A stretch of DNA of 64,000 bases, taken from the IMG/VR virus record IMGVR_UViG_3300044630_006293, positions 124,001 through 188,000 of that record. One strand, 5' to 3'. The translations under genes were made by a program, and so were the position numbers. Each line of letters begins with the position of its first letter. The first letter of the stretch is position 1. The notes beneath the pieces were generated by a model. The model saw only the letters and a list, made by a program, of their open reading frames with translations. It had not been told where the DNA came from and did no database searches. Below are positions 13,431 to 36,697 of this stretch, in pieces.

Positions 13431-13434
13431 GTAT

Positions 13435-14322: not shown

Positions 14323-14324
14323 TT

Positions 14325-14811: not shown

Positions 14812-14813
14812 AG

Positions 14814-20002: not shown

Positions 20003-20012
20003 AATTATCTTT

Positions 20013-20366: not shown

Positions 20367-20401
20367 TTTGAATCCTAGCTTGTAAAGTGTTTAAAAATAA
20401 A

Positions 20402-20435
20402 AGTCGGGAGGAGAGACTGAGCCCTCCTCCCAACT
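20402..20435 (-). terminator. probable intrinsic terminator
   Basis: agt.gggaggag...ctcctccc.act inverted repeat with T-run on minus strand. Confidence 0.6.
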
Positions 20436-20448
20436 TTGTATTTGAGTA

Positions 20449-22980
20449 TTAAAGATTACGGTTAGATGTAGTATGAACGATACCGGAATATTTAGAATGA
20501 TACTTCTGATATTCAATAATGTCAGTAAAAGTTTTTGATTCTTGATTCTCAGGAGAATAAGTCCAAGACTCAGGTTTTACTTGATTAATGGTAATAGTTC
20601 CATCAGGATTGCGATCAACAATTAATCTAGCTGCAATACCATAATGTTGAAGAGCACGCTCTAAATATGGATATACAACACGATTCATTACAATTTGATC
20701 ACTAATTTTACCACCAGAGGTAGTCATGTTTAGTGATACAGAGTAAAGGGCAAGAACAAAGTCATGCCTATCTTGTGGTTTAAGATTGCTCTCAATGGTA
20801 TCTATGATAGAAGTGTAAAGAGATTCCCAAGCATCTCTTTGAACTGCTGCATTATTTTGAATCAACTCAGGAGAATTTGCATTATAAATGCCCATTCGGA
20901 ACCTGCGTAGATGTGGTAATGCATGGAAGTACAAGCGTGAACCAAGTTGGTTAACAACTTCAGGTGGACGAGAATTTTCTTGAGACCAAGAAACTACTCT
21001 TTGACGGTAAGCTTGAAAATACTTAGAACACAAATCATAAATTTGAGTAATTTTACCATCATAAAGTTGAACTGACTCGTTTTCTTTCAATGAGTTTTGA
21101 AAGTTACGAGACTGCCAAAAGGCACGGTCGATTGGACGTCCAGATTCAATAACTTCACGAACAAGCTTTTTAGCTTCTTCGTCAATAGCAGCACGGTCAG
21201 CAGGGTCAACTGTTTGAGTGCAGCCATCAATGGCGTCTTCCAAAGAACAAAGTTGAACTTTGCGGTGATTTGGAAATACCATAGCATGAAGCATTGCTGC
21301 GTTGACATATCTGCCAACATTGCCACCATTCATAGCAGCTAATAAATCTGCCATTACTTGGTTTTGGTCATAGAATTCTGATACGTGAGCACTACTTTTG
21401 TAGTGAGTAGAAGGAAGACCTGAATAAGATACTTGTTTATTATTAATAGCCACGGAAAGGCGCATAGGCCATCCTCGTCCATTTATAACAGGAAACTTAA
21501 CAGGAGTTCCATCTGACATCATCCATGTTGGAGACCATTGATCTTCAACATATTTGAATACAGAATACTCGCCTTTGCCATTCGGAGAACGAATAGCAAT
21601 GACTACTTTTTGTCCGTCGAGTTCTCCGCCTTCAATCGTACGATAGAAGACTTTAAAGAAATCGTCGGCATCGTGGCCACCATGAGATTCATACATCTCA
21701 AGCCAATCAATATCGTCCACAACATGGACTCCAATTTCATTGATTCGCTTAATAGTTCCTGGACTTACATTTATATCATATCCTGCCATGCGAGCAATGG
21801 ATTCGGAAATGATTTGTTCGTAAACAGAACAAGGAATAGGTATGCGTTTTTGAAGTGGCATAGCGTGAGAGACAGCAAGGTTTTCGAAGAGCCACGGAGA
21901 ATCCGTAATCTTCATACCTGCAGCTACCCAACGATATGCAACATAATTCATTCGAGATTGAATTTCTTTATCTTCAATATCTTCAGAGTCTCGCCACATA
22001 CGCGTATATACAGACTTCCAGTTCTGCAATAGCTTACCATTAATTGCGTCTTGAAACATCTTTTCGTATTCTTCTTTGAGCCACATTTCCATGTCAGACT
22101 TGCGGAACAACTTGGGAAAGTTGATAACAGTCTGATCGTCGGTGATAACACGCAACTTTGGGCCTTGAGGCTCAGCCAATAAACGGTAGCCACCAGTATA
22201 GGTGACTTCCTTTTTGATATTGGCAGCAGAAGTAATAACGTCTACATCCAAAGGCAGATTGTCAGAAACAATCATATTGCCTTTTATGATACCAAGATCA
22301 CAAAGAATGCGAGCATTGTATACCTTAGATGTTGCAAGAAAGTCTTGCAAATGACGACGAATATTAGGATCGTAATAATATTCATCTGTGTCAGTAGACT
22401 TAGATGGTTCATATACAGGAAGGTTTTCAATTCCTGCAGCCATTAAACGGCTAGATACAATAAAGCATCCGTCGAGTAAACGTTCCAGTATATCTGGAGT
22501 GTTATACTCTGGAGCATCTTCATCATATATATATTTACTAAATTCAATAGGTTCAGCTATTTTAATATTAAGATTATCATAGTGTGCGTTGAAAAGAGTT
22601 GGGCGATGAAAAGATTTCATGCGCTTAGCACTTTTGCCACCGCCTTTAACAGTGAAGCCCATATGATTAAGCGTTGACATCCAGCCATTAGACTGTCCGT
22701 CAAGTAGTGTGACAACAAGTTTATTTTTGTCAACAATAGCATATTCTACGGAAGGATGACTAATGATGGTTTTAGCTTTCTGCATCTCTTCATCATTTTG
22801 AGGAATAGGCAAAGAAGCTACACGGTATTCAGAAAAAGATCCATTATCCATAGCGTCACGAAGAACTCCAATATCATAGAATCCAAACTGATAGTTATTA
22901 ACGGACCGAAGTGGTCCATTAGGTTTAGATTTAAGCCTGACGGCAGGGGAATAAGTACGGTTTGTACGGCGATTAACCAT
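20449..22980 (-). CDS. two-barrel (YonO/cellular RdRP-like) RNA polymerase-related protein, paralog 1
   Basis: R...GIIKGNM, S..NIKKE, GGHDADD, GNVGRYVN, EDAID in an order resembling RdRP/YonO motifs; shares these with 33174..35954. Confidence 0.55.
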   Translation of the reverse strand: MVNRRTNRTYSPAVRLKSKPNGPLRSVNNYQFGFYDIGVLRDAMDNGSFSEYRVASLPIPQNDEEMQKAKTIISHPSVEYAIVDKNKLVVTLLDGQSNGWMSTLNHMGFTVKGGGKSAKRMKSFHRPTLFNAHYDNLNIKIAEPIEFSKYIYDEDAPEYNTPDILERLLDGCFIVSSRLMAAGIENLPVYEPSKSTDTDEYYYDPNIRRHLQDFLATSKVYNARILCDLGIIKGNMIVSDNLPLDVDVITSAANIKKEVTYTGGYRLLAEPQGPKLRVITDDQTVINFPKLFRKSDMEMWLKEEYEKMFQDAINGKLLQNWKSVYTRMWRDSEDIEDKEIQSRMNYVAYRWVAAGMKITDSPWLFENLAVSHAMPLQKRIPIPCSVYEQIISESIARMAGYDINVSPGTIKRINEIGVHVVDDIDWLEMYESHGGHDADDFFKVFYRTIEGGELDGQKVVIAIRSPNGKGEYSVFKYVEDQWSPTWMMSDGTPVKFPVINGRGWPMRLSVAINNKQVSYSGLPSTHYKSSAHVSEFYDQNQVMADLLAAMNGGNVGRYVNAAMLHAMVFPNHRKVQLCSLEDAIDGCTQTVDPADRAAIDEEAKKLVREVIESGRPIDRAFWQSRNFQNSLKENESVQLYDGKITQIYDLCSKYFQAYRQRVVSWSQENSRPPEVVNQLGSRLYFHALPHLRRFRMGIYNANSPELIQNNAAVQRDAWESLYTSIIDTIESNLKPQDRHDFVLALYSVSLNMTTSGGKISDQIVMNRVVYPYLERALQHYGIAARLIVDRNPDGTITINQVKPESWTYSPENQESKTFTDIIEYQKYHSKYSGIVHTTSNRNL

Positions 22981-23051
22981 TTTGATTTACCTCCTAAAGT
23001 AAATAATGAATGAAAAAGATTTATATTTATGTTTTTTTTGTATAGAAATAA

Positions 23052-23489
23052 CTAAAGAGCTGAAAGCTTACGTTGTTTATTCTCATATATCTTTTTATTG
23101 AGGACACGAAGTCCCCAAATTGGAAAAGTAATAACACGAATAACTTTGTAGATAATTCTAAATAAATCTGAAAAAGCTGTAGTCCATTTATGGCGGGAGT
23201 TTTTCATTATATTTCCACCTAATTTCTTAGCCTGAGGACTATCATAATTCCAGTAAAGGAATTGATAACCAGGCACAGAGAGTACAGTTGATATTACACC
23301 TGCACCCATGGCAACAAGGCCAGCTGCACCAAATGCTATACCCATTACAAATGAAATAAACAATGAGTTTAATAAATTGAATAAGGGACTTTTGGCAGAT
23401 AGCCTACGCCATGCTGGAACTTTAGATGCAATCATCAACTCCAAAAGAGTTGAAGTGACTGCTAGGATTAACATCATTGAAAGTAGCAT
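23052..23489 (-). CDS. hypothetical membrane protein
   Basis: 145 aa with hydrophobic helices. Confidence 0.7.
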   Translation of the reverse strand: MLLSMMLILAVTSTLLELMIASKVPAWRRLSAKSPLFNLLNSLFISFVMGIAFGAAGLVAMGAGVISTVLSVPGYQFLYWNYDSPQAKKLGGNIMKNSRHKWTTAFSDLFRIIYKVIRVITFPIWGLRVLNKKIYENKQRKLSAL

Positions 23490-23577
23490 AATTCTCCTAC
23501 GTGTAGAGAGTTGATTTTTTAATTAAATATAAAATAAAAGTTTTTAAGATTTTTCTAGATGGTAATCTAGAGTAATA

Positions 23578-23811
23578 TGATTCATTTGAGTTATATGTTA
23601 TTAGTTAGTTGCTATGATTCATTTTCCTTTAATGGTACATAATTATTGAAGTTGATTCATTCTGCTTAAATGTTACATAATCATTGGGTGTGATTCATTC
23701 ACTTCATGTGTTACTTATTGAATATGGTGATTCATTTATCCGATGTGTTACTTGTCCGACTATCTGATTCATTCTACTTAAATGATACATAATCATGAGG
23801 TGTGATTTAAA
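23578..23811 (-). ncRNA. TIGR-type array (six 37-38-nt units; edge repeat AATGAATCA, loop repeat ~ATWAKTAACA, two 9-nt spacers per unit)
   Basis: tgattcatt at 23578, 23615, 23653, 23691, 23728, 23765 and degenerate at 23803; second repeat between two 9-nt variable blocks; immediately downstream of a Nop-domain gene. Confidence 0.88.
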
Positions 23812-23818
23812 GTTTAGA

Positions 23819-23840
23819 GTTGGGGGAATAAACCCCCAAC
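23819..23840. terminator. perfect hairpin between Tas gene and array
   Basis: gttggggg-aataaa-cccccaac. Confidence 0.55.
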
Positions 23841-23843
23841 TAA

Positions 23844-24701
23844 CTAAACAAATGGGTTATTAGGAATTGCAATCTCGTGTACATGATCGCCATGGGCAAT
23901 AATGTAGGGACGAGGTGCAGGAGTGCCATGATGAGCCTGATATGCTACAGCATGGTAGTGACTAAGGAAGATTTTTACAGCAAATCGTCTTGCTTGCGCG
24001 TCAATCTGAGCGTCAGAAAGTTTACCAGATTCTAAAGTCTTACGAGTTTGATTCTGTTTAAAGTTTTTCTTTTCTAAGATTGAACTAGCAAATTCAGAGT
24101 AATCTCCTGTTTGATTCTTCTCAGTACGGCGTTGTTTATCTTGCTTATAAAGCTTGCCATAGAAGCATTCTTCTTTGCCAGAGAATTTCATAAAACTCTG
24201 GCCAATTTTCCAGCACAAAGTTTTTAGTTCTGCGTTATAAGGACGCTTCTGTCCTTTCTCCCACACAACGGTGGGATCAAGCCCAGCATATCGCCAAACG
24301 CTACCTGCAGTAGGAGCTTTTGTGATATCGATATGTGATAGAAGTCCAGCAGCAAGTACGGGACCAATGCCAAATTGGCCAATGGCCCATGAACCTACAG
24401 TAGTAGATTCGGCATATGTCTGCAAAGGAGCCTTGAGAGACTTTTCCATTAATCGAAGATTGTAGGAAAGAAATTTCACAAGTTCACTTGGTGATTCTTG
24501 CTTCTCAAGCTCACGAGCCTGAGCAGCAAATGCCATACGATTTTCCTGGAGATTATAGTAGGCAGATACTACTTCACGCGCAGAGCGTGAATCAAGTTCA
24601 ACAGTTAGCGTACGAAGGTCTCGTGCAAACCGGTTGAACATAGGGAAGTCGAAGTCATTAGGATCGGTAGTTTCAGATAAATTTGATACGGGATTGTTCA
24701 T
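23844..24701 (-). CDS. tasA: TIGR-associated Nop-domain protein (TasA-like; IS110 C-terminal-domain homolog with no RuvC/HNH)
   Basis: GIGPVLAAGLL..ID...SVWRYAGLDP, YNAELKTLCW, AQARRFAVKIFL resemble the IS110/Nop domain; no DEDD motif seen; adjacent array. Confidence 0.8.
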   Translation of the reverse strand: MNNPVSNLSETTDPNDFDFPMFNRFARDLRTLTVELDSRSAREVVSAYYNLQENRMAFAAQARELEKQESPSELVKFLSYNLRLMEKSLKAPLQTYAESTTVGSWAIGQFGIGPVLAAGLLSHIDITKAPTAGSVWRYAGLDPTVVWEKGQKRPYNAELKTLCWKIGQSFMKFSGKEECFYGKLYKQDKQRRTEKNQTGDYSEFASSILEKKNFKQNQTRKTLESGKLSDAQIDAQARRFAVKIFLSHYHAVAYQAHHGTPAPRPYIIAHGDHVHEIAIPNNPFV

Positions 24702-24931
24702 GATGGTTCCTTGTATTGTATAAATAAAAAGTACTGTTATTCTTTGTATAGACTAGAATGGTTCTTCATCATTTTGTGGCAGAAAGATGATTAGATCATC
24801 ATCTGGAATTTCGCCAAACATTTTTTCAGAAATCCATTCTGGATCTAGCTGTTCATCTTGAGGGTTGGACATAGTTAGATAGCCTCTCTATGTTAAATAA
24901 TAATTAAGTTATTTCTTTGTATGAAAATAAA

Positions 24932-24963
24932 AAAGGGGAGAGTCAAAAGACTCTCCCCTTTTC
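24932..24963. terminator. bidirectional-type intrinsic terminator
   Basis: aaaaaggggagagtc-aaaa-gactctcccctttt. Confidence 0.75.
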
Positions 24964-24985
24964 TTGTATGAACTGATTACTTGTA

Positions 24986-25333
24986 TCAGTTAGTAAGCAT
25001 AATCCATACATCAAACATTTTGGTAGTGTCGTTGAACACTGAGGATGTTTGAGTACGTAGATTATCTTTAGCTGCTCGTGAGTACAGAGATGCACGAAGA
25101 GCAGCAAGATGTTTAGCTGTCATGATAGGAATTTCAATATGAAACCAAACGTTCCTGTTTTGTAGAAGCTCTCCGTAGATAGTTCCAATAACAGGATTGC
25201 GACGTCTGCCACGTCCAGCGTTGATCGGTGGTTCGCCGTTGATACGCTTAAGAAGTTTGGTAGGCTGTTGTGCAGCTGCAAACTTTCTTGGATTGCGATT
25301 CAATTGGGTTTCGGTACTTTCGATGATTGCCAT
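24986..25333 (-). CDS. hypothetical basic protein
   Basis: 115 aa; AAGGAG SD. Confidence 0.7.
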   Translation of the reverse strand: MAIIESTETQLNRNPRKFAAAQQPTKLLKRINGEPPINAGRGRRRNPVIGTIYGELLQNRNVWFHIEIPIMTAKHLAALRASLYSRAAKDNLRTQTSSVFNDTTKMFDVWIMLTN

Positions 25334-25387
25334 CGGTTGATACTCCTTGCTAATTACTGAGTTTAATGGTCAGATTTATGTATGAAC

Positions 25388-26242
25388 TTAAGAGGCTCTT
25401 ATACTCCAGTTGCCAAGTCTGCCTGAAGTATTGTGTAGAATCCAGCTAGCAAATAAAGCATTTGCTTCTGGATTATACAAGTCTTCTGGTTCATAGCCTG
25501 TATAGTCCCTTAACGTACGGAACCATGACGAGTTAATCTGCAAGAGACCATTGTCATAGGTTCCATTACTGTTTAAGGTCCATGTAATTTTGCCATTTTT
25601 AAATTTAGCATTTACTGCACCAGGGTTGCATCGTGATTCACGATATGCTATGTAAGAAAAGACTTTTACAGGAAGATTATACTTTCTGAAAAGATCTTCA
25701 TACTTTGGGCAGTACAAAGATTCATCGGTAGGAAGACTTACTGAGTAAGTATTCTTGTAATAAGGTTGAAGTTTCTTTGATACTAAGCATGGCCATGGTT
25801 CGTATCCGAGTGGTTTTTTATTATAGCGAATTCTTTGATAAAGAATAGGATCGCCAGCTTCAGATACTCTTTTAACTATGACAGTTTTAAAGCCAAGATT
25901 GGCAATACGATTAGCTATGAGAACTTGTTCATGTTTAGTGGCCTTGTCAGGAGATGGAGCAAATTGCTCCCCACCGTACATTTCCCACATTCCCATATCA
26001 GTATCGCCAAATTGGCCTTGATGTTGTATGGTCAAACCTCCGGCGTATTCACCGGATTTAGACCAATCTATTTGGGCAACTGATTTTCCTGTTCCACAGG
26101 ATGCAATCTGTTCCCAGTACTTAGTTGGTGCCCCCATTTTAAATGACACTTTTTTCCATGTTCCTGCCTGAGCAGGAGAGCTGGGTAGTGTCATAGATAT
26201 GAGGATAACAAGTGCTGTAATAATAGATGTAAGCTTGCGCAT
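25388..26242 (-). CDS. secreted cell-wall hydrolase: Rpf-like domain plus SLT/lysozyme-like domain
   Basis: Signal peptide; WEQIASC...YAGGL...W..YGG...A...EQV.IA (Rpf); AYRES...GLLQIN...YNPEAN (SLT). Confidence 0.85.
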   Translation of the reverse strand: MRKLTSIITALVILISMTLPSSPAQAGTWKKVSFKMGAPTKYWEQIASCGTGKSVAQIDWSKSGEYAGGLTIQHQGQFGDTDMGMWEMYGGEQFAPSPDKATKHEQVLIANRIANLGFKTVIVKRVSEAGDPILYQRIRYNKKPLGYEPWPCLVSKKLQPYYKNTYSVSLPTDESLYCPKYEDLFRKYNLPVKVFSYIAYRESRCNPGAVNAKFKNGKITWTLNSNGTYDNGLLQINSSWFRTLRDYTGYEPEDLYNPEANALFASWILHNTSGRLGNWSIRAS

Positions 26243-26343
26243 TTTGGTGTCGCTCCTTTCGTATTGGGTTTGCTAGTCTAAGTTGAAGACCAGCATTAGC
26301 ATCGCGCAGGTTGCGAAACCGAAGATGAACGGACAAATACGAA

Positions 26344-26439
26344 ATGCCCGCTCGACACTTAGCAGTGGTGCCTTCTCCGACTTCACAGTATAACTGTTAG
26401 GTGGGGATTCTCCCCCTGCCCGGATTGTGTTGCGGGCAT
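26344..26439 (-). promoter_or_regulatory. structured 5' leader, c-di-AMP (ydaO)-like riboswitch candidate
   Basis: 8-bp closing stem ATGCCCGC/GCGGGCAT; AATCC, GGGGGAGAATC and CTGCTAA elements; extended -10 TGCTATACT just upstream; precedes the Rpf gene. Confidence 0.45.
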
Positions 26440-26480
26440 GGTATTAGTATAGCACATTCGTGGGTTGGTTACACGTATGT

Positions 26481-26702
26481 TCAGTTATTTTCCTCCTGTT
26501 TGGGACTGACCACTTCTGCAAGAAGAGATTCAATTCTACTTATGGTAGAATTTAAATCATTGATCTTCTGAAGAAGTAATAGGAGAGCTTTAAGTATGTT
26601 TTCGGAATGTGGTTCCATAACATAAGCCTCCTTTAGATCAGTCAAACGGAACGGGCTGGTAGCTTTTAATAAAGCATCAACCCGTGCGCTAATCACACAC
26701 AT
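26481..26702 (-). CDS. hypothetical protein (true start probably MEPH)
   Basis: ORF; GGAGG SD before internal ATG. Confidence 0.45.
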   Translation of the reverse strand: MCVISARVDALLKATSPFRLTDLKEAYVMEPHSENILKALLLLLQKINDLNSTISRIESLLAEVVSPKQEENN

Positions 26703-26769
26703 TAGTGATGATTAGAAATAGTACCGTAGATTTTTAAATTATCTACAGTTTGATGAGGAAAAATGTAAA

Positions 26770-26988
26770 TTAATTAGCGTTGTATTGAGTGGAGATTACA
26801 GCTGCAAGTACACGATACTTGCCGGCAGAAATCTTCTCAAAACGATGTGAATTGTTTTTGATATGTGCATAAGCAGTTGGAGCAGTACATTGCACAGCTT
26901 CGATAATATCTGAAGGTGAAATGATTGTTCCAATTTTTGTATTAATATATGTTTCAATGATTGCATTGAATTTAGCTGGCTTTGCCAT
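26770..26988 (-). CDS. small protein, possibly winged-helix
   Basis: 72 aa; AAAGG SD. Confidence 0.6.
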   Translation of the reverse strand: MAKPAKFNAIIETYINTKIGTIISPSDIIEAVQCTAPTAYAHIKNNSHRFEKISAGKYRVLAAVISTQYNAN

Positions 26989-27192
26989 CTTTATGTTACC
27001 TTTCTGTCAAACCGCAAAGCGGTTGTTGTAGTTTTTTATGGTATATAAAGGTGTATAAATATGAGATTAAAAATACACTTTAAATTAAGTTATGTTAGTA
27101 TATCATAAAATGACATTACAAACATAGACAATTATAGTGTATTTAAGAGTAAAGGTATATAATATTAGAGGGTGAACAACGTTAGTTGTTGA

Positions 27193-27453
27193 TTATGGTT
27201 GAAGAGTAGTTTTATCTAGACTAATTCCATAAGCTTTGGCATTGTGCCAGTAAGCTTCTTTAAAGTAATGTAGTCCTTGTTCAATCTCTTGAATGAAGTT
27301 ATAATATGATTGTATCATATCTTCATTGGTGAAATCGAGATAAATGATTAACTCATTTAACTTATTCATTGATTGGCGAGCCAAGTCAACGGTGTTCATA
27401 AGATTTGAAAAGAGTTCGATTTTAGTTGATTCTAGTTGATCATAAGTTGTCAT
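27193..27453 (-). CDS. hypothetical protein
   Basis: 86-aa ORF. Confidence 0.6.
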   Translation of the reverse strand: MTTYDQLESTKIELFSNLMNTVDLARQSMNKLNELIIYLDFTNEDMIQSYYNFIQEIEQGLHYFKEAYWHNAKAYGISLDKTTLQP

Positions 27454-27471
27454 AAGATTTGGTTCCTGTGT

Positions 27472-28679: not shown

Positions 28680-28979
28680 TTACAATCGGAGTTCTACTCC
28701 ATACATCCGCTTGAAATCTCGTCTCATAGGATGAAGAGCCGATTCAGTTCCATGCGTTGTATACATTGGTCCATTGATACTCGGAGGGGGGAGTATCTTA
28801 TAGACCCCTGATTTACAGCGACTTACTTCGAAACCTAACCGTTGAAGCTCAGCCATGACATTCTTCATGGATTTTGACTGATGCTGTTTGGGCATCTGTA
28901 TTTCTCCTCTTGTAATCTGGTATATTGCCAGGTAAGACAAGTATATCAGTACATGAGGATGTTTGCAACACCCAGACAC
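28680..28979 (-). CDS. hypothetical protein (probable start MPKQ), HicA-like size and pattern
   Basis: LQRLGFEV...GVYKI...TTHGT; GAGGAG SD before MPKQ. Confidence 0.5.
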   Translation of the reverse strand: MSGCCKHPHVLIYLSYLAIYQITRGEIQMPKQHQSKSMKNVMAELQRLGFEVSRCKSGVYKILPPPSINGPMYTTHGTESALHPMRRDFKRMYGVELRL

Positions 28980-29176
28980 GACATTTCTAAGTTCGGCGGT
29001 CTGGGGCCTATTTTAAAAAATAATCATTTAGAAATGATCTTCTCACTTCGGCGGTCTGGGGTTTATAAATAAAAATAAAAAAGAATATTATCTAGTAAGT
29101 AGATACACTATATAAGCATACCTACTCACTAGATTTGTAATGTTCCGCGTTCTTTGCATGAATTAAAAAATAACAG

Positions 29177-29295
29177 TGGAGAAGGCAGGACTCGAACCTG
29201 CTAACAATCTATATAGATATATGGATATTATCGCCATGTTAACTTATGTTAAATGCGCATTATCTATTTAAGAGTTGTTATTCCCATACATCCCC
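29177..29295 (-). ncRNA. tRNA-Ala/tmRNA-like element: acceptor stem plus T arm, no normal D or anticodon arms
   Basis: T arm GCAGG-TTCGAGT-CCTGC, then CTTCTCC-A; 5' GGGGATG pairs with it (G3:U70 wobble, one mismatch). Confidence 0.35.
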
Positions 29296-29333
29296 GTGGG
29301 TGGACAGTTTATCTACATGTCCAGGTAGGAACC

Positions 29334-30371
29334 TCAGAAAGGAAGTTCTTCGTCAGTGTCATCAACACTAACAGCGTTTGCAGCAACACCAACAGGAGTT
29401 GATTCTGCACGTGCTGAGTTCTTCCACAGATCGATAGCAATAGACTTGTTATCTACAACCATGGTAAAACGACCACAAGGTGCATTGACTGCAGCGTACT
29501 GATCTTTAGGAACCAGATTGCCACCTTCATCAACAGTGATGATTTGTTGAGCGCCAGCCCAGTTAGTTGTCCATTGACGACTCATGTTGCCAATAGCCTT
29601 GATGCGGTCTTCAGCTTTCTTGACTTTAACCTGTGACCAGCTTGTTTGTGCTGCGAGTTCAGCTTTAAGCAACGCTGCTTCTTTACGAAGACGAACGATA
29701 CGACTAAACTGATCAACGCTTGCATCAACGAGGTTCAAGAAGCCCTGACCAGTGCGAGACTGATTACGGTCAACAGTACCAAGTTCAAAGCTGGTAATAG
29801 GAATGCCTGCTTCGTGAGCATATGCTGCTACGATGTTTCCGCGATTCTGCATTGTACCAAGAACGTCAACGGCACCTGCAGCTTTAAAAGCATCAAATGC
29901 GTGTTGGATTCCTGATTCAGATGCACCAAATTGCTGGAACAACAAGGGCATACCCTCATTAAATTTCAAGCCAATGCGTGAAGCTGTATCGAGGAACGTT
30001 TGTTCGTCGAGTGGCTTAGCAGCAGAAGCATTTACAGTTGCGCGTAGCAATTCAGGTAAAGTCATTGTTTCACCATCAACAATAAGCTCAACTTCCATCT
30101 TTACAGGCTTGAAAATACCAGTAACGATTTTGTAAGTTTCACCAGTGTATGGGGACTTTTGCTGAATTACGCTCATGCGGGTGAGGCTTGCTTCATGAAG
30201 AGTTGCATATGCCGGCACTTCAATACCGTTAACGCTACCTTTGAATGCAATCCGACGACCTGCGTGGAGTGTAGTGGTACGACCAGTAGTCTCAAAGACT
30301 TCAGGTGTATCAGCTACGGATGAGAAAAGCTCGGCATCAAAACCAAACTTTGAAAGTATGTTATTGCTCAT
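29334..30371 (-). CDS. hypothetical protein with acidic C-terminal tail (..DEELPF)
   Basis: 345-aa ORF; tail resembles those of SSB-like proteins. Confidence 0.8.
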   Translation of the reverse strand: MSNNILSKFGFDAELFSSVADTPEVFETTGRTTTLHAGRRIAFKGSVNGIEVPAYATLHEASLTRMSVIQQKSPYTGETYKIVTGIFKPVKMEVELIVDGETMTLPELLRATVNASAAKPLDEQTFLDTASRIGLKFNEGMPLLFQQFGASESGIQHAFDAFKAAGAVDVLGTMQNRGNIVAAYAHEAGIPITSFELGTVDRNQSRTGQGFLNLVDASVDQFSRIVRLRKEAALLKAELAAQTSWSQVKVKKAEDRIKAIGNMSRQWTTNWAGAQQIITVDEGGNLVPKDQYAAVNAPCGRFTMVVDNKSIAIDLWKNSARAESTPVGVAANAVSVDDTDEELPF

Positions 30372-30400
30372 GATATAAATATTCCTTTTTGTTGTGTTTC

Positions 30401-30601
30401 TTACTGTTGTGTTTCTTCAGCATTGTGAATAGGGGGCTGATTCCCCTTTTCTTTGGTGGAACCGCTAGTTTCAGCGAATCCAGCTAAGAACTCATCTTTA
30501 AGACTCTTGCTCGTTGAAGCTGTCTTATTTGGAAGTGACTTTGCACCAGCGAATACTTTGCCAGTAATAGAGCCAATTTTCTTAGATGTAATATTCTTCA
30601 T
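30401..30601 (-). CDS. hypothetical protein
   Basis: 66 aa; AGGAGA SD. Confidence 0.6.
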   Translation of the reverse strand: MKNITSKKIGSITGKVFAGAKSLPNKTASTSKSLKDEFLAGFAETSGSTKEKGNQPPIHNAEETQQ

Positions 30602-30949
30602 GTGTTTCTCCTGTGTTAATTATCGTAAAAAGAACCGAATAGTGTATCGAGTAGGTCTAGTAGCCAGTCAAACATTTAACGTTTTCCTCCATTTTTAGGT
30701 CCCCTTTTCTTGAATGAACCTTGAATGTAGAGAACGCTTAGAAAAGATACTAGACCTACTACGATATATATACTTAATGTGATCATGCAGAGCGTTTAAT
30801 TTCGCCAGACAAGTCCTGATCATAAATACGAACAGGAGCAAGGTTGACGCGTTTACGCCATTTGATTGTTCCATTAGCTAGTGCGATGTTTAGAATGACT
30901 GATTGTACAAAAAGTAAACTAAACATTCCGCTGAAGTACCAATACCACA

Positions 30950-31249
30950 TTAGACTGATTCCATTTCTGCTATTTTAATGCTATTGTTGTACCATTCGAC
31001 TAGTGTGTTACCTATTTTTCCGTAGCGGGTAATGTTTTCGTTGTAGCCGGCGTAATCAATAAAGTATTGAGTACCATCCATAAGCTCAATTTTAACTTCA
31101 CCATGAGTAGTATGATCAATAATCATAAGAGCGTTTAGATTCATGTCTAGGCGAATGTAAGCTTGACCACCGTTGTAGTGATAAAGTCTATATTCTGCTG
31201 CAGCAAGGTCAATAAGTTCCAATGATTGTAGAAATGTAATCTTATTCAT
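30950..31249 (-). CDS. hypothetical protein
   Basis: 99 aa; GGAGG SD. Confidence 0.65.
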   Translation of the reverse strand: MNKITFLQSLELIDLAAAEYRLYHYNGGQAYIRLDMNLNALMIIDHTTHGEVKIELMDGTQYFIDYAGYNENITRYGKIGNTLVEWYNNSIKIAEMESV

Positions 31250-31556
31250 TATATTCCTCCTGATAGTTAGTTTATTTTTTTGTTACGAAGCCGGCGATGT
31301 ATGCACCGAAGATGCGTACGCGTTGGCTAATTGCAATAATAGTATTTTTAATGAAAAACATGATTATTTATGCTTTCTTGAGACGAGTTTGTTGCCGGCA
31401 AAGTAACCGATAACGAAACATATTGTTGTTATAAGGATTGATATATTCTTCTTTAAGTTATTCATTTTGCCTTTCTTGGTTTAGAATAAAAATAAAAGTG
31501 AGTGGCTAGTAAGACACTAACCACCCACTGATATTTGTGGAGGTGCTCGCAAAATG

Positions 31557-31787
31557 CTAGTTGCCAAACATTTTATCCCAACATTTAGGATGTATGCCTG
31601 TCATAAAGATTTCACGTTCATCTGGACCTAGGAATGGGAAAGCGTCTTGAATAAGAAGAGTTCCAGAATTCCAAGATTCATACTTAGATTTATCCACAAT
31701 AATTTTATTATCTTCCTTACATACATAGCATGCAGGTGATGTAACAATAATTGTATCTGTTGAGTTATTTGAGTAGTTATATTCCAT
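31557..31787 (-). CDS. conserved phage Zn-binding small protein
   Basis: CxxC...IQDAFP.L...EREI.MTG....CW. Confidence 0.7.
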   Translation of the reverse strand: MEYNYSNNSTDTIIVTSPACYVCKEDNKIIVDKSKYESWNSGTLLIQDAFPFLGPDEREIFMTGIHPKCWDKMFGN

Positions 31788-32373
31788 GTTAGTCTCCCTT
31801 TTCTTGGGTAGTTTGGTTTATGTACTTTGGGTCCTATAGTTTTTAAAACATTTTTTTAGAATATTTAGCTCCGCGTGTCTTGAAGTTCACCGAGAACTTA
31901 AGCATACTGCGAAGCATTTGATTATGAAGTGGCTCCGGAGGAGTCGCTGATTAATCAAAACAAAAAATAGGTATTAGTACTCCCGCAGACCAGAGTTGCA
32001 AGTCCGCGAGAGTACTAATTGGGGGATACCTATTTGGTTACGAATTTCCATTTAATGGAATCTAAGATAACCATGTTATTAATAACACGAGCAAAGAAAG
32101 GATCAGCTTTCCGCGCGTTGATTAGAGCAATCTGTAGAGTCTGTGACGATTCTTCAGACATTAGCTCACGGATAGGATATGTATTCACGTTGCACCTCCT
32201 AGTGCTACTATGGGAAAGTCGCAAAGGACAATCCCCTTTTCTTGGGTAGAGGGGGGTTGAGCAGTTTTGCGCAGAGCATACTCAGGCTCCGTCTGTGCAT
32301 TTTACCAAGGACTACAGATATCCTTGAACCCCGTCGGGTAAGCAGTTTAAAGACATACTCAGGTCTTCACGAG

Positions 32374-32805
32374 TCACCAAGGTTCGTCGTTATCATCCAC
32401 AACTGGAGACTGGAATTCAAGTTCTGTTACCAAACCCTTAAGGTCGGTAAAGAACTCGTCTTCTTCTTCAGTTGTAGCAACGACTACTTGCTTGTCAGTG
32501 ACACGCATAGCAGCCTTGAGTGCAGCAAAGTCCGCGAATTTGATATTCATGGAACCGTTGCTGGTTGCTTGGATGGCGGTCAAATCAATGACCAACGTGG
32601 CTACCTTTTTGCCGAAGATTTCCCGCAAGAAATTAGCCATGTTAACTTGAGCCGACTTAGTAGGTAGATTAACCCACACAGTAGACTCAGGAAACAGTGG
32701 GCTAGTTTTGCCAGAAATAGGCTTGAGCCACAAGGAAGACTTGTTCACGTCCGGAGAAGTGTTCAAGTAGACCTCAGTTTGCATTGCGTTGAGTGTATCA
32801 CTCAT
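32374..32805 (-). CDS. hypothetical protein with acidic C-terminal tail (..NDEPW)
   Basis: 143 aa; GGAGG SD. Confidence 0.7.
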   Translation of the reverse strand: MSDTLNAMQTEVYLNTSPDVNKSSLWLKPISGKTSPLFPESTVWVNLPTKSAQVNMANFLREIFGKKVATLVIDLTAIQATSNGSMNIKFADFAALKAAMRVTDKQVVVATTEEEDEFFTDLKGLVTELEFQSPVVDDNDEPW

Positions 32806-32907
32806 TTTGGCACCTCCAAGTGCTTGATGTTGTGGGTATCGGTTGATATCCCTTTTCTTGGATAGACCACGCCGAAGCGCAACTACCCGAGATTTTGCTG
32901 TGAGTCT

Positions 32908-33061
32908 TGCGTGGACTTTCCGCGCAGTGACTTTAGAATATACGCTTAGCGAGCCCCCACAGGGCGAGCGTAGCGTTGGCAGATAAGTGTTGCGTGGGGT
33001 TTCCGCGCAGTGACTTTAGAATGTAGGCGTAGCGAGTCCTCACGGGACGAGCGTAGCGTTG
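32908..33061. repeat. two 71-bp direct repeats (period 83) containing a hairpin with compensatory changes
   Basis: 32908-32978 and 32991-33061; gccc/gggc versus gtcc/ggac. Confidence 0.85.
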
Positions 33062-33173
33062 ATAGGGGAGTGTGAACCACGAAGGTAGCCCGGAGTTGTT
33101 CCGGAGACTCGAGGTAGGCCCTTTCTGGGGACTGATTGAGTCCTCCCCTAGGGTTTTAGAATAACTCTAACTA

Positions 33174-35954
33174 CTACTTGTCCCTGTTACGGAACCAGAG
33201 CATTGCCTCATAGAAGTACTCAAGGACCATATGGTCAGAGTTCTTGGGAGAGGTGAAGAGCCAACGATCAAAGTTATTCCGGTCGTCGTGCTTGAGCTTG
33301 ACTGACTCAGACTTCCTGATGTAGGACATGCGAGTCATGCTCAGGATGAACTTGTGGAACTTGACATCGTCGTTGAGCCTTTCCTTGTAGGAGGCAAAAC
33401 GATCAGCTATGGCAATTGCTACATTGTCATAGTGCTCAGAGATTGCAGCTTTGTCGTTCTTGATGTTTGCAGGAACGGTGAACTGGTTCTTGAGCTCCGT
33501 AACGAGTTTGCGGAAACGATCCTCATTCTGGCCATGGATGGTGATGTTCAACTCAGGGATCTCCTTGATGTTGACGTTCAGCCAGCTAATCATCTTGTTG
33601 TGAGTCTCACGCACCATCATTTCACGAGGGATCATGAAGTCACGAACAATCGGAGACTGCTCAGGAGAAAGATTGCCAAGCCAGCTATTGATGGCCCTGC
33701 TCTGCTTGAGGCGAATACATGCAGCATTCATGTTGCGACTGTACCACCAGTAGGCATCGATCTTCTTCTCAGTTACGAGAGTTGCAAGAGTATTGTCAGA
33801 CCACTTGACCAAAGTACTGAGGTCGTTCTTGTCACCCTTGCACTGTTGCAGAGCGTCAATCATATCCTCGTTTGCACATGGCAGAGTGTTGAATGGGGAA
33901 TCGTAGGTGCTATACCAAAGCATCTTGGTCTTAACTTGACCACCAACTCCTGCTCCCTTATAGAGAGAGGTGTTATAGTTGTAGCGAGTAAGTTCCCAGT
34001 TCCAAACAGGGTGCTGAGGACGGTCAGATCCACGAACCTTGGATGGAAGCTTGCCATTGCGAGCAGTGCTGTTGAACTTGTCAAAGTCCTTCTCGTAGAT
34101 GGTAGGAAGGTTGATTCCGTCATCCTTACCAAGGAAAACAGGTCCAAACCCGTCTACATCCATGATATGAAACTCACTCCAGTCATTTGGGGTGCGAACA
34201 ATGAATGCCACAAGGCGAGTATTGTTATCCTTAGTCACCATTAGGCGAATATGAACTCCAATCTCATCATCAAGGTCTGCACCACCAAGTTTGCCAAGGA
34301 TCTCAGCAGCTTGATTACCAGGGATCATGAATGTCTGAGTTTCCTCATGGTACATGCCCTCGTCGCTTGTAAGGTCTACATCATAGCCAGCAAGGTAAAC
34401 AACCTCTTTGGTCATGACATAAGCACGATAAGCCCATGGCATGAAGACGAATGACTTCTTTGACTTGGACGGAGCTTTCCAACAGGTGCCTACTTTACGA
34501 AGGCTGCCAGTGTTGTCATACTCATCCAGGAACATCTTCTTGAGTCCATTTGCTCGCATGAACATCATAGTCTGGCTGATACCAATACCAAGGTCAAGAT
34601 CATTAAGCATTGCTGCCATCTTGTTTGTCTTGGACGTGAACTGGCCATCATTGATGTGAGAGATCTTCTCAGCCTCAGTGGTTGCACGTTCTGGCATGAT
34701 GTTATTGAGCATCTCGATATCCTTGCCCTCTACCATGTCGTCGAAAGCTTTATCCAGCACAACCTGGAAGGTATCAAGCATCTCGCCAAACTCAAATACA
34801 CCAGGAATTCCCTGATATTGAGCAAGCATCTGATCATTAGTCTTGACTATGCCAGGACCATGGTGTGGTTCCAGTGTAATCATTTCCCAAGTACCATCAG
34901 TGCCAAACTCCTTCTTGAAGTTATCCACAGATGTAAAGATGTCATATGTCTCACCTTTACCAATGATACCAAGCTTACGAAAGCGAGCATTGATCTTATC
35001 ACGTTGTCCAGTGATGAGGTTACCCTTGATCAAGCCAGCTACACCATTCACGTTTGTAACAATACGAACGGTATGGTTGGTGATCTTATTATCATTTATC
35101 TGACGCACAATGTGACCATGGCCACTATTGCGATAGACATACCGTACTGTTTCTACGGCACCGATAGAGATACCATCCATAGTCTTCTCAGCAGCAAGGT
35201 CATCAACCAGGTGAGGAAGAGCTTTGCGGATCTCCTGATAGGACAAGACCTTGATACGGAGCTTCTTGCTGTCACCTTTGTGAACTGCATATCCACTAAC
35301 GGACTTGACTAGTTCCACAAGACGCTTTACCATCTTATCGGAGTTGCCAATAACAAAGCCATACTTAGCCATGTTGACATAGTCTTTGCTGTTGTAGCCC
35401 TTGATACGGATGGTGGTTTCTGCATCGAAGTCAGCATAACCAAAGATGATATCCTTAGGCTTGCTGATAAGAGATGAATCAACCTTCTGATGGTCACCAG
35501 TGAATGGGTTCTTGAAAGCTGTGATGGTTACACAAAAGCTCTCATGAGAAAACCGATCCTCAAGCATGGCAAACTTGTAGTTACCACGGTTGATTTCGTG
35601 AACGATGACAACACCTATCTTGGTGAGCCAATAATCAGGATCGTTAGTAATAACACGGCTGATTACTGTGTCGTTAATTGTGGTAGTTTCAATCAAGTAT
35701 TCCTTGATCATAGCACCTCCTTGGGTAGTGGTCTTTACCATGTTTGGCTCCTTTTTGTTGTCCTGAATATTTACATCAGGGTTAAGGTGGTTAGTGGTCC
35801 GGTCAAAAGGCTGAGTGACCTCTTGCTTGGGAGCACCTTTGATTGTGCCGGACTTCTGGTCCAAGAGAAGCTGGGAAGCAACTGCATAGCTGCTATCAGC
35901 CTCAACGGGGATCCATATATCGGATCCGGTATACTTGACGAGATATGTCTTCAT
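33174..35954 (-). CDS. two-barrel (YonO/cellular RdRP-like) RNA polymerase-related protein, paralog 2
   Basis: R...GLIKGNL, SVDNFKKE, GGADLDD, RTPN, GVGGQV, EDMID match 20449..22980. Confidence 0.55.
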   Translation of the reverse strand: MKTYLVKYTGSDIWIPVEADSSYAVASQLLLDQKSGTIKGAPKQEVTQPFDRTTNHLNPDVNIQDNKKEPNMVKTTTQGGAMIKEYLIETTTINDTVISRVITNDPDYWLTKIGVVIVHEINRGNYKFAMLEDRFSHESFCVTITAFKNPFTGDHQKVDSSLISKPKDIIFGYADFDAETTIRIKGYNSKDYVNMAKYGFVIGNSDKMVKRLVELVKSVSGYAVHKGDSKKLRIKVLSYQEIRKALPHLVDDLAAEKTMDGISIGAVETVRYVYRNSGHGHIVRQINDNKITNHTVRIVTNVNGVAGLIKGNLITGQRDKINARFRKLGIIGKGETYDIFTSVDNFKKEFGTDGTWEMITLEPHHGPGIVKTNDQMLAQYQGIPGVFEFGEMLDTFQVVLDKAFDDMVEGKDIEMLNNIMPERATTEAEKISHINDGQFTSKTNKMAAMLNDLDLGIGISQTMMFMRANGLKKMFLDEYDNTGSLRKVGTCWKAPSKSKKSFVFMPWAYRAYVMTKEVVYLAGYDVDLTSDEGMYHEETQTFMIPGNQAAEILGKLGGADLDDEIGVHIRLMVTKDNNTRLVAFIVRTPNDWSEFHIMDVDGFGPVFLGKDDGINLPTIYEKDFDKFNSTARNGKLPSKVRGSDRPQHPVWNWELTRYNYNTSLYKGAGVGGQVKTKMLWYSTYDSPFNTLPCANEDMIDALQQCKGDKNDLSTLVKWSDNTLATLVTEKKIDAYWWYSRNMNAACIRLKQSRAINSWLGNLSPEQSPIVRDFMIPREMMVRETHNKMISWLNVNIKEIPELNITIHGQNEDRFRKLVTELKNQFTVPANIKNDKAAISEHYDNVAIAIADRFASYKERLNDDVKFHKFILSMTRMSYIRKSESVKLKHDDRNNFDRWLFTSPKNSDHMVLEYFYEAMLWFRNRDK

Positions 35955-35959
35955 GACAT

Positions 35960-36380: not shown

Positions 36381-36409
36381 TTTTAATTAACCTTATTTAC
36401 TAATAGGTA

Positions 36410-36685: not shown

Positions 36686-36697
36686 GCTTATTCCTTT

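What the first reader, a model, noticed from the sequence alone, without database searches (positions are those of the whole stretch)
20449..35954. Two paralogous two-barrel RNA-polymerase-like proteins with a non-canonical DxDD catalytic loop
Seen: the 843-aa (20449..22980) and 926-aa (33174..35954) proteins share, in order, GxIKGN, SxxNxKKE, GGxDxDD, RxPN, GxVG and EDxID. Established: YonO and cellular RdRP have a KG motif and a DxDGD Mg-binding loop. Here the loop is DADD/DLDD, and an RxP motif follows it rather than preceding it. Inference: a divergent single-subunit polymerase family, duplicated for different infection stages. Paralog 2 sits in the high-GC first-transcribed block.
Basis: partly seen in the sequence, partly recalled or inferred. 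Interest (0 to 1): 0.65.

Follow-up and report, generated by a model that had tools for sequence, protein, structure and literature searches.

The report
New phage two-barrel RNA polymerase family
Two unannotated genes of a 211-kb lake-water jumbo phage fold like the single-chain 'two-barrel' RNA polymerases (QDE-1/RDR2, phage P23-45 gp64). They belong to a virus-only family whose metal-binding loop reads DxDD instead of the near-universal DxDxD, and the phage carries a third, tail-module copy, so it probably transcribes itself without the host enzyme.

Summary
Both ORFs exist on the minus strand (843 aa and 926 aa). They are collinear paralogs (BLASTP E 8e-15), and all six motifs are present.

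Pfam, PHROGs, NCBIfam, PDB-sequence and GenBank-phage searches find nothing. AlphaFold2 models (pLDDT 87 and 86) match only single-chain two-barrel RNA polymerases:
- QDE-1: Foldseek E 7e-10.
- RDR2: VIA-align Z 12.6 over about 570 residues.
- P23-45 gp64 and gp96, and crAss-like gp66.

The invariant residues are the expected active-site ones: R, KG and KxE in the first barrel, and helix-GGxDxDD-strand followed by RxP and E in the second.

New findings:
- A third paralog of about 1,650 aa has the same DxDD loop. It lies in the tail module outside the window and is probably a virion polymerase.
- A sister lineage of paralog 2 carries the canonical DxDGD at the same position.
- Paralog 1 and the tail-module copy were found in all 12 related phage genomes searched. 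Paralog 2 is variable, sits here in a GC3-anomalous island, and elsewhere is fused to Pif1/RecD helicases or SLOG domains.
- No sigma factor, RNA polymerase beta subunit or primase was detected.

Stage-specific roles and catalysis are inferred, not shown. This is a new variant of a known kind.

The parts
20449..22980 (-). RNAP-A (P0001, 843 aa): conserved single-chain two-barrel polymerase, candidate non-virion RNA polymerase
   Evidence: ORF and translation. AF2 model pLDDT 87.3, pTM 0.84. Foldseek QDE-1 E 7e-10. VIA-align RDR2 Z 12.6, QDE-1 Z 10.2, P23-45 gp64 Z 9.4. 217 metagenomic relatives. Found in all 12 related genomes searched.
22162..22593 (-). RNAP-A first barrel (DPBB-B, residues 130-273) with R224, K233-G234 (22279-22284) and N254-x-K256-x-E258 (22207-22221)
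   Evidence: This stretch alone matches generic double-psi beta-barrels: formate dehydrogenase, p97-N and designed DPBB 7dvf. Invariant columns. Coordinates checked.
21541..21843 (-). RNAP-A second barrel (DPBB-A, about residues 380-480) with loop GGHDADD (21661-21681) and RSPN (21580-21591)
   Evidence: Secondary structure is helix 423-432, loop, strand 441-450. G, D, D, D, R, P and E are invariant across 60 sequences of three paralog families. Coordinates checked.
33174..35954 (-). RNAP-B (P0002, 926 aa): variable second paralog; KG at 35022-35027, loop GGADLDD at 34266-34286, RTPN at 34185-34196
   Evidence: AF2 pLDDT 86.2, pTM 0.80. Foldseek QDE-1 E 2e-7, gp62/gp64 about 1e-3. 35 relatives, several with an N-terminal Pif1/RecD helicase or DUF4326+YpsA/SLOG.
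32374..36934 (-). GC-rich island holding RNAP-B and four small ORFs
   Evidence: GC3 0.46-0.54 (z +2.4 to +3.4) against a genome mean of 0.26. RNAP-A has GC3 0.286.
17501..19183 (-). SF2 helicase (ResIII + Helicase_C, weak SWI2/SNF2), syntenic with RNAP-A
   Evidence: Pfam E 2.5e-31. phrog_16 DNA helicase E 7e-91. Found 1-2 kb downstream of RNAP-A at 62-80% identity in most related loci.
23052..23489 (-). orf145, conserved gene that in many related loci lies just upstream of RNAP-A; possible accessory factor, function unknown
   Evidence: No Pfam or PHROG hit. Present upstream of RNAP-A in most related loci at 43-72% identity, directly adjacent in many.
19391..20002 (-). orf203, conserved gene between RNAP-A and the helicase; function unknown
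   Evidence: No family hit. Syntenic in many loci at 24-53% identity.
35955..36077 (-). Leader cassette copy 1: terminator-like hairpin with T-run, then about 85 nt of conserved leader ending at the RNAP-B start codon
   Evidence: Repeat families D3 and D4. Sequence read. Only two copies in the genome.
36246..36367 (-). Leader cassette copy 2, in front of a 45-aa Cys-rich ORF (36108-36245, minus strand)

Best explanation
P0001 (RNAP-A) and P0002 (RNAP-B) are paralogous single-chain nucleotide polymerases built on two double-psi beta-barrels. That architecture is shared with cellular RNA polymerase beta/beta-prime, the eukaryotic RNAi polymerases QDE-1 and RDR2, Thermus phage P23-45 gp64 and gp96, and crAss-like phage gp66. 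They belong to an unannotated family found almost only on virus contigs. It is typical of a clade of 170-270-kb lake-water jumbo myophages.

Likely mechanism. The first barrel supplies invariant basic residues (R224, K233, K256 in RNAP-A) that hold the substrate phosphates. The second barrel supplies three invariant aspartates (D437, D439, D440) on the loop between a helix and a strand. These would bind the catalytic Mg ions for template-directed RNA synthesis. The third aspartate is one residue nearer than in the canonical DxDxD. A sister lineage of RNAP-B still has DxDGD at that spot.

The phage has a third paralog, RNAP-C. It is about 1,650 aa, lies in three frames in this assembly, and is one 1,661-1,696-aa gene in four related phages. 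It sits in the tail module where tape-measure and ejection proteins sit. It is probably packed in the virion and starts transcription on entry.

RNAP-A lies in a conserved gene neighbourhood next to an SF2 helicase and is the main non-virion enzyme. RNAP-B is a variable accessory paralog, here in a foreign-looking GC-rich island.

Shown: paralogy, fold, conservation pattern, gene context, and absence of other detected RNA polymerase genes. Inferred: catalysis, DNA template, division of labour, and virion packaging.
For: Paralogy:
- BLASTP E 8e-15.

Fold:
- RNAP-A model pLDDT 87.3.
- Foldseek hits with E <= 0.001 are all two-barrel RNA polymerases; the listed ones are QDE-1 at 7e-10, RDR2, and P23-45/P74-26 gp64/gp62 at 7.5e-6. 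crAss-like phi14:2 gp66 follows just above that cut at 1.3e-3.
- VIA-align gives Z 12.6 with 567 aligned residues for RDR2. The 19 best rows are all such polymerases and the next rows have Z <= 4.8.
- RNAP-B model pLDDT 86.2 gives the same hit list.

Active site:
- The invariant columns are the motif residues.
- GGxDxDD...RxP...E is invariant in 60 sequences from three families.
- The canonical WDQDGDQ loop aligns to it in syntenic paralogs of two related phages.

Third paralog:
- Profile hit at G000 20112-20267, E 2.4e-6.
- HHalign of family A/B against family C gives probability 96.4, E 1.1e-9, spanning both barrels.
- Collinear invariant residues.
- The pieces form one frame of 1,661-1,696 aa in four relatives.
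- It lies between tail sheath and baseplate wedge genes.

No other RNA polymerase machinery detected:
- No RNAP beta subunit and no sigma70 region 2.

Context and distribution:
- Synteny with the SF2 helicase.
- RNAP-A and RNAP-C are present in all 12 related genomes searched.
- Precedent: P23-45 has a tape-measure-fused virion polymerase plus a non-virion paralog that arose by duplication (PMC10770324).
- Short contigs 99-100% identical to RNAP-A occur in three lake metatranscriptome runs.
Against: - No biochemistry, and no cultured phage or host.
- The fold rests on AlphaFold2 models. I could not read coordinates, so the clustering of the three aspartates at a metal site is inferred from topology and conservation, not measured.
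- No sequence method links the family to any known polymerase.
- No recurrent promoter-like motif was found upstream of genes with a simple k-mer count.
- Timing of expression is unknown.
- The metatranscriptome contigs may be carried-over DNA.
- The fusions of RNAP-B relatives to Pif1/RecD helicases and DprA-like SLOG domains, and the lack of any recognisable primase, fit a replication or recombination role at least as well as transcription for that paralog.
- The T7-type RNA polymerase scan is uninformative because its control did not ring.
Confidence: 0.7

Rival explanations
1. RNAP-B, and possibly another paralog, is not a transcriptase but a helicase-coupled RNA polymerase. It would make primers or R-loops for phage DNA replication or recombination-dependent replication, filling the place of the missing primase.
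For: - Relatives of RNAP-B carry N-terminal Pif1/RecD-type helicases or DUF4326+YpsA/DprA-like SLOG domains.
- RecA lies 2.6 kb upstream on the same strand.
- The genome has DnaE and a DnaB-like helicase.
- No DnaG_N, Toprim_3 or Prim-Pol was found in any of 13 related genomes. Toprim_2 was scanned in this genome only and was also absent.
Against: - RNAP-B was not detected in two related contigs scanned by HMM. One (G010) was scanned except for a 2-kb gap; the other (G008) ends before the expected position. An essential primase should be universal.
- Failure to detect a primase by three or four Pfam models is weak evidence, and many phages use the host primase.
- A helicase could equally serve promoter opening for a polymerase that cannot melt duplex DNA.
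Confidence: 0.2
2. The proteins are RNA-dependent RNA polymerases, like the cellular RdRPs they resemble most. They would make double-stranded or antisense RNA for regulation or counter-defence.
For: The best structural matches are RDR2 and QDE-1.
Against: [quoted passage not shown] The QDE-1 structure paper's abstract describes both DNA- and RNA-dependent activity (PMC9508822).
- The phage relatives with solved structures (gp64, gp96, gp66) are DNA-dependent (PMC10770324).
- A 211-kb phage with no other detected RNA polymerase needs a transcriptase.
Confidence: 0.05
3. One or both paralogs are catalytically dead structural or regulatory relics, because the universal DxDxD triad is broken.
For: The canonical spacing is absent.
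Against: - Three acidic residues, both lysines and the flanking GG, RxP and E are invariant down to 14-20% identity across three families. This is the pattern of purifying selection on an active site.
- Dead paralogs usually lose these residues first.
Confidence: 0.03
4. They are two-barrel DNA polymerases of the PolD DP2 kind.
For: PolD shares the two-barrel core (PMC4996933).
Against: - No PolD chain appears among the listed structural matches.
- The phage already has a DnaE-type replicase.
Confidence: 0.02

Closest known systems
Eukaryotic cellular RdRPs: Neurospora QDE-1, plant RDR2 (PDB 2j7n, 7w84, 7eu1)
   Same: Single chain with the lysine-bearing barrel first and the aspartate-bearing barrel second. 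Best structural matches over about 570-600 residues: Z 10-12.6, Foldseek E down to 7e-10. From my recollection of RdRP sequences, a small-residue pair also precedes the aspartate loop there (SG before DLDGD, versus GGxDxDD here); this was not tested.
   Different: About 10% sequence identity and no Pfam RdRP hit. The loop is DxDD, not DxDGD. These are phage proteins with no RNAi context.
Thermus phage P23-45 gp64 (non-virion) and gp96 (tape-measure-fused virion) RNA polymerases (PDB 8f72, 8h2m; PMC10770324)
   Same: A phage encoding more than one single-chain two-barrel RNA polymerase that arose by duplication, one of them in the tail tape-measure position. Structural matches Z 9.4 and 7.6.
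   Different: P23-45 enzymes keep DxDxD. gp64 is about 590 aa. Here there are three paralogs in a jumbo myophage, and the tail-module copy is about 1,650 aa rather than the N-terminus of a 5,002-aa protein. No sequence similarity is detectable.
crAss-like phage phi14:2 gp66 virion RNA polymerase (PDB 6vr4)
   Same: A virion-delivered two-barrel RNA polymerase encoded among giant virion proteins, with a non-canonical middle of the loop (DFDID).
   Different: Weak structural match: Z 5.0, Foldseek E 1.3e-3. The DxDxD spacing is kept. It is a 2,180-aa protein.
YonO of Bacillus prophage SPbeta and YonO-like enzymes of two jumbo phages
   Same: Single-chain two-barrel DNA-dependent RNA polymerase of phages (PMC5467207, PMC7824862).
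   Different: No YonO chain appeared among the PDB matches, so it was not compared directly. No sequence similarity was found in GenBank phages.
[quoted passage not shown]
   Same: Jumbo phages with a virion and a non-virion set of two-barrel polymerases, no sigma factor, and an associated SF2 helicase (PMC7824862).
   Different: Here each enzyme is one chain of the RdRP-like clade.

Membership tests
Two-barrel (double-psi beta-barrel) polymerase superfamily, single-chain RdRP-like clade | Two DPBB domains in one chain, lysine barrel before aspartate barrel, forming a crab-claw core | tested here: met
   AF2 models of both paralogs match only such enzymes over most of their length. Residues 130-273 of RNAP-A alone match generic DPBB domains.
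Two-barrel (double-psi beta-barrel) polymerase superfamily, single-chain RdRP-like clade | DxDxD metal-binding triad on the loop of the aspartate barrel | tested here: not met
   The loop is DxDD in RNAP-A, RNAP-B and RNAP-C, invariant in 60 sequences. Three aspartates are kept, but the third is shifted by one residue. A sister lineage of RNAP-B has DQDGD at the aligned place.
Two-barrel (double-psi beta-barrel) polymerase superfamily, single-chain RdRP-like clade | Two invariant basic residues in the other barrel | tested here: met
   K233 and K256, plus R224, are invariant in families A and B. Their counterparts R501, K521 and K546 are invariant in family C. Equivalence to the beta-subunit lysines is inferred from fold, not from superposed coordinates.
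Two-barrel (double-psi beta-barrel) polymerase superfamily, single-chain RdRP-like clade | Bridge helix and trigger loop after the aspartate barrel | tested here: inconclusive
   Conserved helices 539-568 (G553 V555 G556 V559 M563) follow the barrel, and the structural alignments run to about residue 800. I could not inspect residue-level superposition.
Two-barrel (double-psi beta-barrel) polymerase superfamily, single-chain RdRP-like clade | Template-directed NTP polymerisation | not testable with these tools
   Needs purified protein.
Pfam RdRP (PF05183) and other curated polymerase families | Sequence match over the curated threshold | tested here: not met
   No Pfam family at E <= 1, no meaningful PHROG or NCBIfam hit, and no PDB sequence hit with full-length or barrel profiles.
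Virion-packaged phage RNA polymerases (P23-45 gp96, crAss gp66 type), for RNAP-C only | Encoded in the virion or tail module and present in particles | tested here: inconclusive
   The gene lies between tail sheath and baseplate wedge genes, beside 2,500-aa and 1,472-aa proteins. Presence in particles is not testable here.
PolD DP2-type two-barrel DNA polymerases | Structural similarity to DP2 and association with a DP1 exonuclease | tested here: not met
   No PolD chain among the listed matches. The replicase present is DnaE. DP1 was not searched.

The most novel reading that the evidence does not exclude
This clade of lake jumbo phages runs entirely on three single-chain two-barrel polymerases that use a re-spaced DxDD metal site. 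A tail-delivered enzyme starts transcription and RNAP-A carries it on. The helicase-linked RNAP-B acts as the phage's missing replicative primase or R-loop maker. That would be the first two-barrel, RNA-polymerase-type primase known in a virus of bacteria, and a living example of the proposed overlap between transcription and replication enzymes.
Probability: 0.13. Interest if true: 0.9.

Novelty: new variant of a known kind. Interest (0 to 1): 0.72.

Why it matters
The DxDxD triad is treated as the signature of two-barrel polymerases, and it is how P23-45 gp64/gp96 and crAss gp66 were first spotted. A large, conserved virus family that keeps the fold and three aspartates but changes their spacing has several consequences:
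- Motif-based searches miss whole families.
- It offers a natural experiment on the geometry of two-metal catalysis, since DxDD and DxDGD versions exist within one family.
- It adds a third independent case of phages pairing a virion-delivered polymerase with non-virion paralogs.
- It identifies an abundant group of freshwater jumbo phages as probably independent of host RNA polymerase.
- The helicase and SLOG fusions of paralog B may show how such enzymes gain access to single-stranded templates.

Tried and rejected
Searches that found nothing:
- Pfam, PHROGs and NCBIfam scans of both proteins gave nothing meaningful.
- Profiles of the full-length family and of the aspartate barrel against PDB sequences gave nothing. 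The only hit was a His-tag/enterokinase DDDDK artefact.
- tblastn against 50,697 GenBank phage records found no match for either protein.
- ESM Atlas feature search scored 0.83, which is noise level.
- ESM Atlas shape search returned only unannotated clusters, TM 0.45/0.56.
- BFVD returned two uncharacterized proteins of uncultured phages.
- Paper searches for DxDD or for this family returned nothing relevant.

Analyses that led nowhere:
- A 9-mer count in 89 upstream regions gave no clear phage promoter.
- The leader cassette before RNAP-B is not a genome-wide promoter; it has only two copies.
- The T7-type RNA polymerase scan is uninformative because its control rang nowhere.

Considered and rejected:
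- That the high G+C marks early transcription. GC3 of the island points to foreign origin instead.
- That RNAP-B is universal. It was not found in G008 or G010, although both contigs are incomplete.

Not used:
- The large representative search (search of protein representatives), because the claim does not rest on absence of relatives and the operators flagged its cost.
- Complex prediction, because I make no binding claim.
Full report
SETTING

The window is bases 124001-188000 of a 210,831-bp IMG/VR virus record with direct terminal repeats, rated complete. Genome G+C is 35.8%.

The phage is a contractile-tailed jumbo phage:
- Tail sheath, baseplate wedge and portal genes are recognisable.
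- It also encodes DnaE, a DnaB-like helicase, a class II ribonucleotide reductase and RecA.
- Near-identical DNA is held by at least 17 lake-water metagenome runs.

THE OBSERVATION

Both ORFs are present on the minus strand exactly as described: 20449-22980 (843 aa, P0001) and 33174-35954 (926 aa, P0002).
- BLASTP aligns them collinearly over about 800 residues at 20% identity, E 8e-15.
- All six motifs are present in both proteins, in the same order.
- P0001 has 217 metagenomic relatives and P0002 has 35. None has Pfam domains on the polymerase part itself (domains occur only on N-terminal fusions of some P0002 relatives), and the few that carry a source name are called 'hypothetical protein'.
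- In an 84-sequence alignment of both families the invariant columns are the motif residues: K233 G234, N254 K256 E258, G434 G435 D437 D439 D440, R464 P466 N467 E471, E581 D585.

WHAT THE PROTEINS ARE

No sequence method gives a name. Pfam, PHROGs and NCBIfam are empty. Profiles against all PDB sequences find nothing. tblastn against 50,697 GenBank phage records finds nothing.

Structure gives a clear answer.
- The AlphaFold2 model of P0001 has pLDDT 87.3 and pTM 0.84.
- In Foldseek against the PDB it matches QDE-1 (E 7e-10), maize and Arabidopsis RDR2, P23-45/P74-26 gp64/gp62 (7.5e-6, 6e-5), crAss-like phi14:2 gp66 (1.3e-3) and P23-45 gp96. Unrelated folds start at E about 0.1.
- VIA-align gives Z 12.6 for RDR2 with 567 aligned residues spanning model residues 35-820. 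It gives Z 10.2 for QDE-1, 9.4 for gp64, 7.6 for gp96 and 5.0 for gp66. Every other row has Z 4.8 or less.
- Residues 130-273 alone hit generic double-psi beta-barrels, including a designed one.
- The P0002 model (pLDDT 86.2) returns the same list.

The fold is there.

THE ACTIVE SITE

The first barrel (about residues 130-273) carries R224, K233-G234 and K256-x-E258. The second barrel (about 380-480) carries helix 423-432, the loop GGHDADD (434-440), strand 441-450, then R464-x-P466-N467 and E471. This is the order found in RdRP-type enzymes: lysine barrel first, aspartate barrel second. From my own knowledge of the E. coli sequence, the helix-loop-strand setting matches that of NADFDGD in beta-prime.

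In a 60-sequence alignment of this barrel from three paralog families, with identities down to 14%, the invariant columns are G, D, D, D, R, P and E, and the second G is nearly invariant. That gives GGxDxDD...RxP...E. The fifth position, where the canonical third aspartate would be, varies by family:
- F in family A.
- E or S in family B.
- K in family C.
So the third ligand must be the aspartate at position four.

Strong support for homology of the loop comes from a sister lineage of paralog B. It is found in two related phages (G003 and G011), and the two copies are 43% identical to each other. It lies at the syntenic place and reads WDQDGDQ, the canonical DxDGD, at the aligned columns. It keeps KG, KxE and RSPNG.

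I could not read model coordinates. That the three aspartates cluster at a metal site is therefore inferred from topology and conservation, not measured.

A THIRD PARALOG

Searching the whole genome with the family profile gave a weak third hit at G000 20112-20267, at the start of a 949-aa ORF. Its N-terminus reads LGGFDLDDE, followed by FRQPTGPAE.
- In four related phages the two upstream ORFs and this ORF form one frame of 1,661-1,696 aa.
- In this assembly the homology runs through three frames, switching near 19.5 kb and 20.0 kb. I did not test whether that is real or an assembly error.
- The family has 84 relatives of mostly 1,550-1,760 aa.
- Its invariant residues are K240 K243 R244 D435 G436 R501 K521 K546 G758 D761 D763 D764 R787 P789 E794. 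These are collinear with those of P0001.
- HHalign between the families gives probability 96.4%, E 1.1e-9, over 310 columns spanning both barrels.
- The gene lies between tail sheath genes and the baseplate wedge, beside 1,614-aa, 2,500-aa and 1,472-aa proteins. That is where tape-measure and ejection proteins are encoded.

The closest precedent is P23-45. Its virion RNA polymerase is the N-terminus of the tape-measure protein, and its non-virion polymerase arose from it by duplication (PMC10770324).

DISTRIBUTION AND CONTEXT

- Paralog A and paralog C are present in all 12 related IMG/VR genomes searched.
- Paralog A sits in a conserved neighbourhood, orf145 - RNAP-A - orf203 - SF2 helicase. 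The helicase is 62-80% identical across loci.
- Paralog B is variable.
  - A DxDD form of 804-815 aa sits at the syntenic place in four genomes.
  - The DxDGD form is in two genomes.
  - Nothing was found in two contigs scanned by HMM, both of them incomplete.
- In this genome paralog B lies in a 4.6-kb island (window 32374-36934) whose GC3 is 0.46-0.54 against a genome mean of 0.26. Paralog A has native composition. This argues for replacement from a higher-G+C relative rather than for early transcription.
- Members of family B elsewhere carry an N-terminal Pif1/RecD-type helicase or DUF4326 plus a YpsA/DprA-like SLOG domain. P0002 has a small N-terminal domain and a disordered linker at that place.
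- Two members are in UniProt/BFVD, both as uncharacterized proteins of uncultured phages.
- Among 185,579 prokaryote species' genomes, only two MAG contigs hold the family. The family is essentially viral.

HOW IT MOST LIKELY WORKS

The genome shows no RNA polymerase beta subunit and no sigma70 region 2. The T7-type scan was uninformative. A 211-kb phage with three two-barrel polymerases and no sigma factor most simply transcribes itself. By analogy with P23-45, N4 and phiKZ-type phages:
- RNAP-C would be delivered with the DNA and read the first genes.
- RNAP-A, perhaps with the SF2 helicase and the small conserved neighbours, would read later classes.
- RNAP-B would be an accessory enzyme.

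I put 0.7 on 'active DNA-dependent RNA polymerases that transcribe the phage'. I am less sure of the exact division of labour.

The main rival concerns RNAP-B only. Three things fit a primer- or R-loop-making role:
- The helicase and DprA-like fusions of its relatives.
- The nearby RecA.
- The lack of any recognisable primase. DnaG_N, Toprim_3 and Prim-Pol were absent in 13 genomes, and Toprim_2 was absent in this genome.
I give this 0.2.

Short contigs 99-100% identical to RNAP-A occur in three lake metatranscriptome runs. This does not prove transcription.

COMPARISON AND NOVELTY

In function and fold these proteins are single-chain two-barrel RNA polymerases of the RdRP-like clade. They fail two membership tests. 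There is no sequence match to any curated family, and the defining DxDxD spacing is not met.

The papers I could search describe no such family and no DxDD loop in an RNA polymerase. The P23-45 paper treats DxDxD as the signature used to find such enzymes, and the crAss preprint does the same with DFDxD.

I therefore rate it a new variant of a known kind: a new family with a re-spaced catalytic loop, present in three paralogs in an abundant freshwater phage clade.

LIMITS

- Residue-level superposition on QDE-1 was not possible.
- The large representative search and complex prediction were not used.

Noticed in passing
outside the window: G000 18028-19578, 19499-20047, 20085-22934 (+); loci L003/L004: Third two-barrel paralog (RNAP-C) with LGGFDLDDE, lying in three reading frames in this assembly. 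It is one gene of 1,661-1,696 aa in four related phages. It sits in the tail module between sheath and baseplate genes.
   Followed up: yes
L089:8785-11478 (G003) and L092:8928-11525 (G011): Syntenic paralog-B genes of 898 and 866 aa whose loop reads WDQDGDQ, the canonical DxDGD. They have a roughly 30-residue insertion before RSPNG. The family therefore holds both spacings.
   Followed up: partly
window 32374-36934: Compositional island: five minus-strand ORFs including RNAP-B with GC3 0.46-0.54 against a genome mean of 0.26. It looks like acquired or replaced DNA.
   Followed up: partly
window 35955-36077 and 36246-36367 (-): Duplicated cassette of a terminator-like GC hairpin with a T-run, followed by an 85-nt conserved leader ending in AAGGAGA and ATG. 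One copy precedes RNAP-B and one precedes a 45-aa Cys-rich ORF (36108-36245). Only two copies exist in the genome.
   Followed up: partly
window 32903-33068: Two tandem copies of an 83-nt GC-rich unit (82-86% alike) just downstream of RNAP-B. No Rfam family matches.
   Followed up: no
window 23570-23796: Array of 37-38-nt repeats (TGATTCATT...GTTAC), about 90-300 nt upstream of the orf145 - RNAP-A operon. Next to it is an IS110-like transposase gene (23844-24701, phrog_4285 E 1.6e-38) that sits at different places in related loci.
   Followed up: no
whole genome G000 and related records G001-G012: DnaE and a DnaB-like helicase were found in G000; the relatives were not searched for them. No DnaG_N, Toprim_3 or Prim-Pol primase was detected in any of the 13 genomes, and Toprim_2 was absent in G000, the only genome scanned for it.
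   Followed up: partly
proteins P0142, P0154, P0155 and P0135, P0152, P0153: Relatives of RNAP-B with an N-terminal Pif1/RecD-type SF1 helicase, or with DUF4326 plus a YpsA/DprA-like SLOG domain, fused in front of the polymerase.
   Followed up: partly
window 11266-15084 (-): Four tRNA genes: Ile-TAT, Met-CAT, Asn-GTT and Leu-TAA.
   Followed up: no
window 2460-8760, 15995-17425, 38558-41615: An AAA ATPase, a JAB-domain protein, an S8 subtilase, RecA and a ClpB-like AAA_2 ATPase are encoded around the polymerase genes.
   Followed up: no
L013 and L037 (contig IMGVR_UViG_3300042868_009074, 267,766 bp): One contig holds two RNAP-A genes, 76% and 52% identical to P0001. It may be a join of two related phages.
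   Followed up: no
L119, L120: The only two hits in 185,579 prokaryote genomes are MAG contigs, from a Cyclobacteriaceae bin and an Acidibacter bin. They are probably phage contigs binned with bacteria and give at most a weak host hint.
   Followed up: no
window 20451-21348: Three lake metatranscriptome runs hold 183-257-nt contigs 99-100% identical to parts of RNAP-A. These could be transcripts or carried-over DNA.
   Followed up: partly
G006 (231,459 bp; L065, L087, L088): A more distant jumbo phage also has three paralogs, in frames of 897, 975 and 1,470 aa, all with GGxDLDD.
   Followed up: partly
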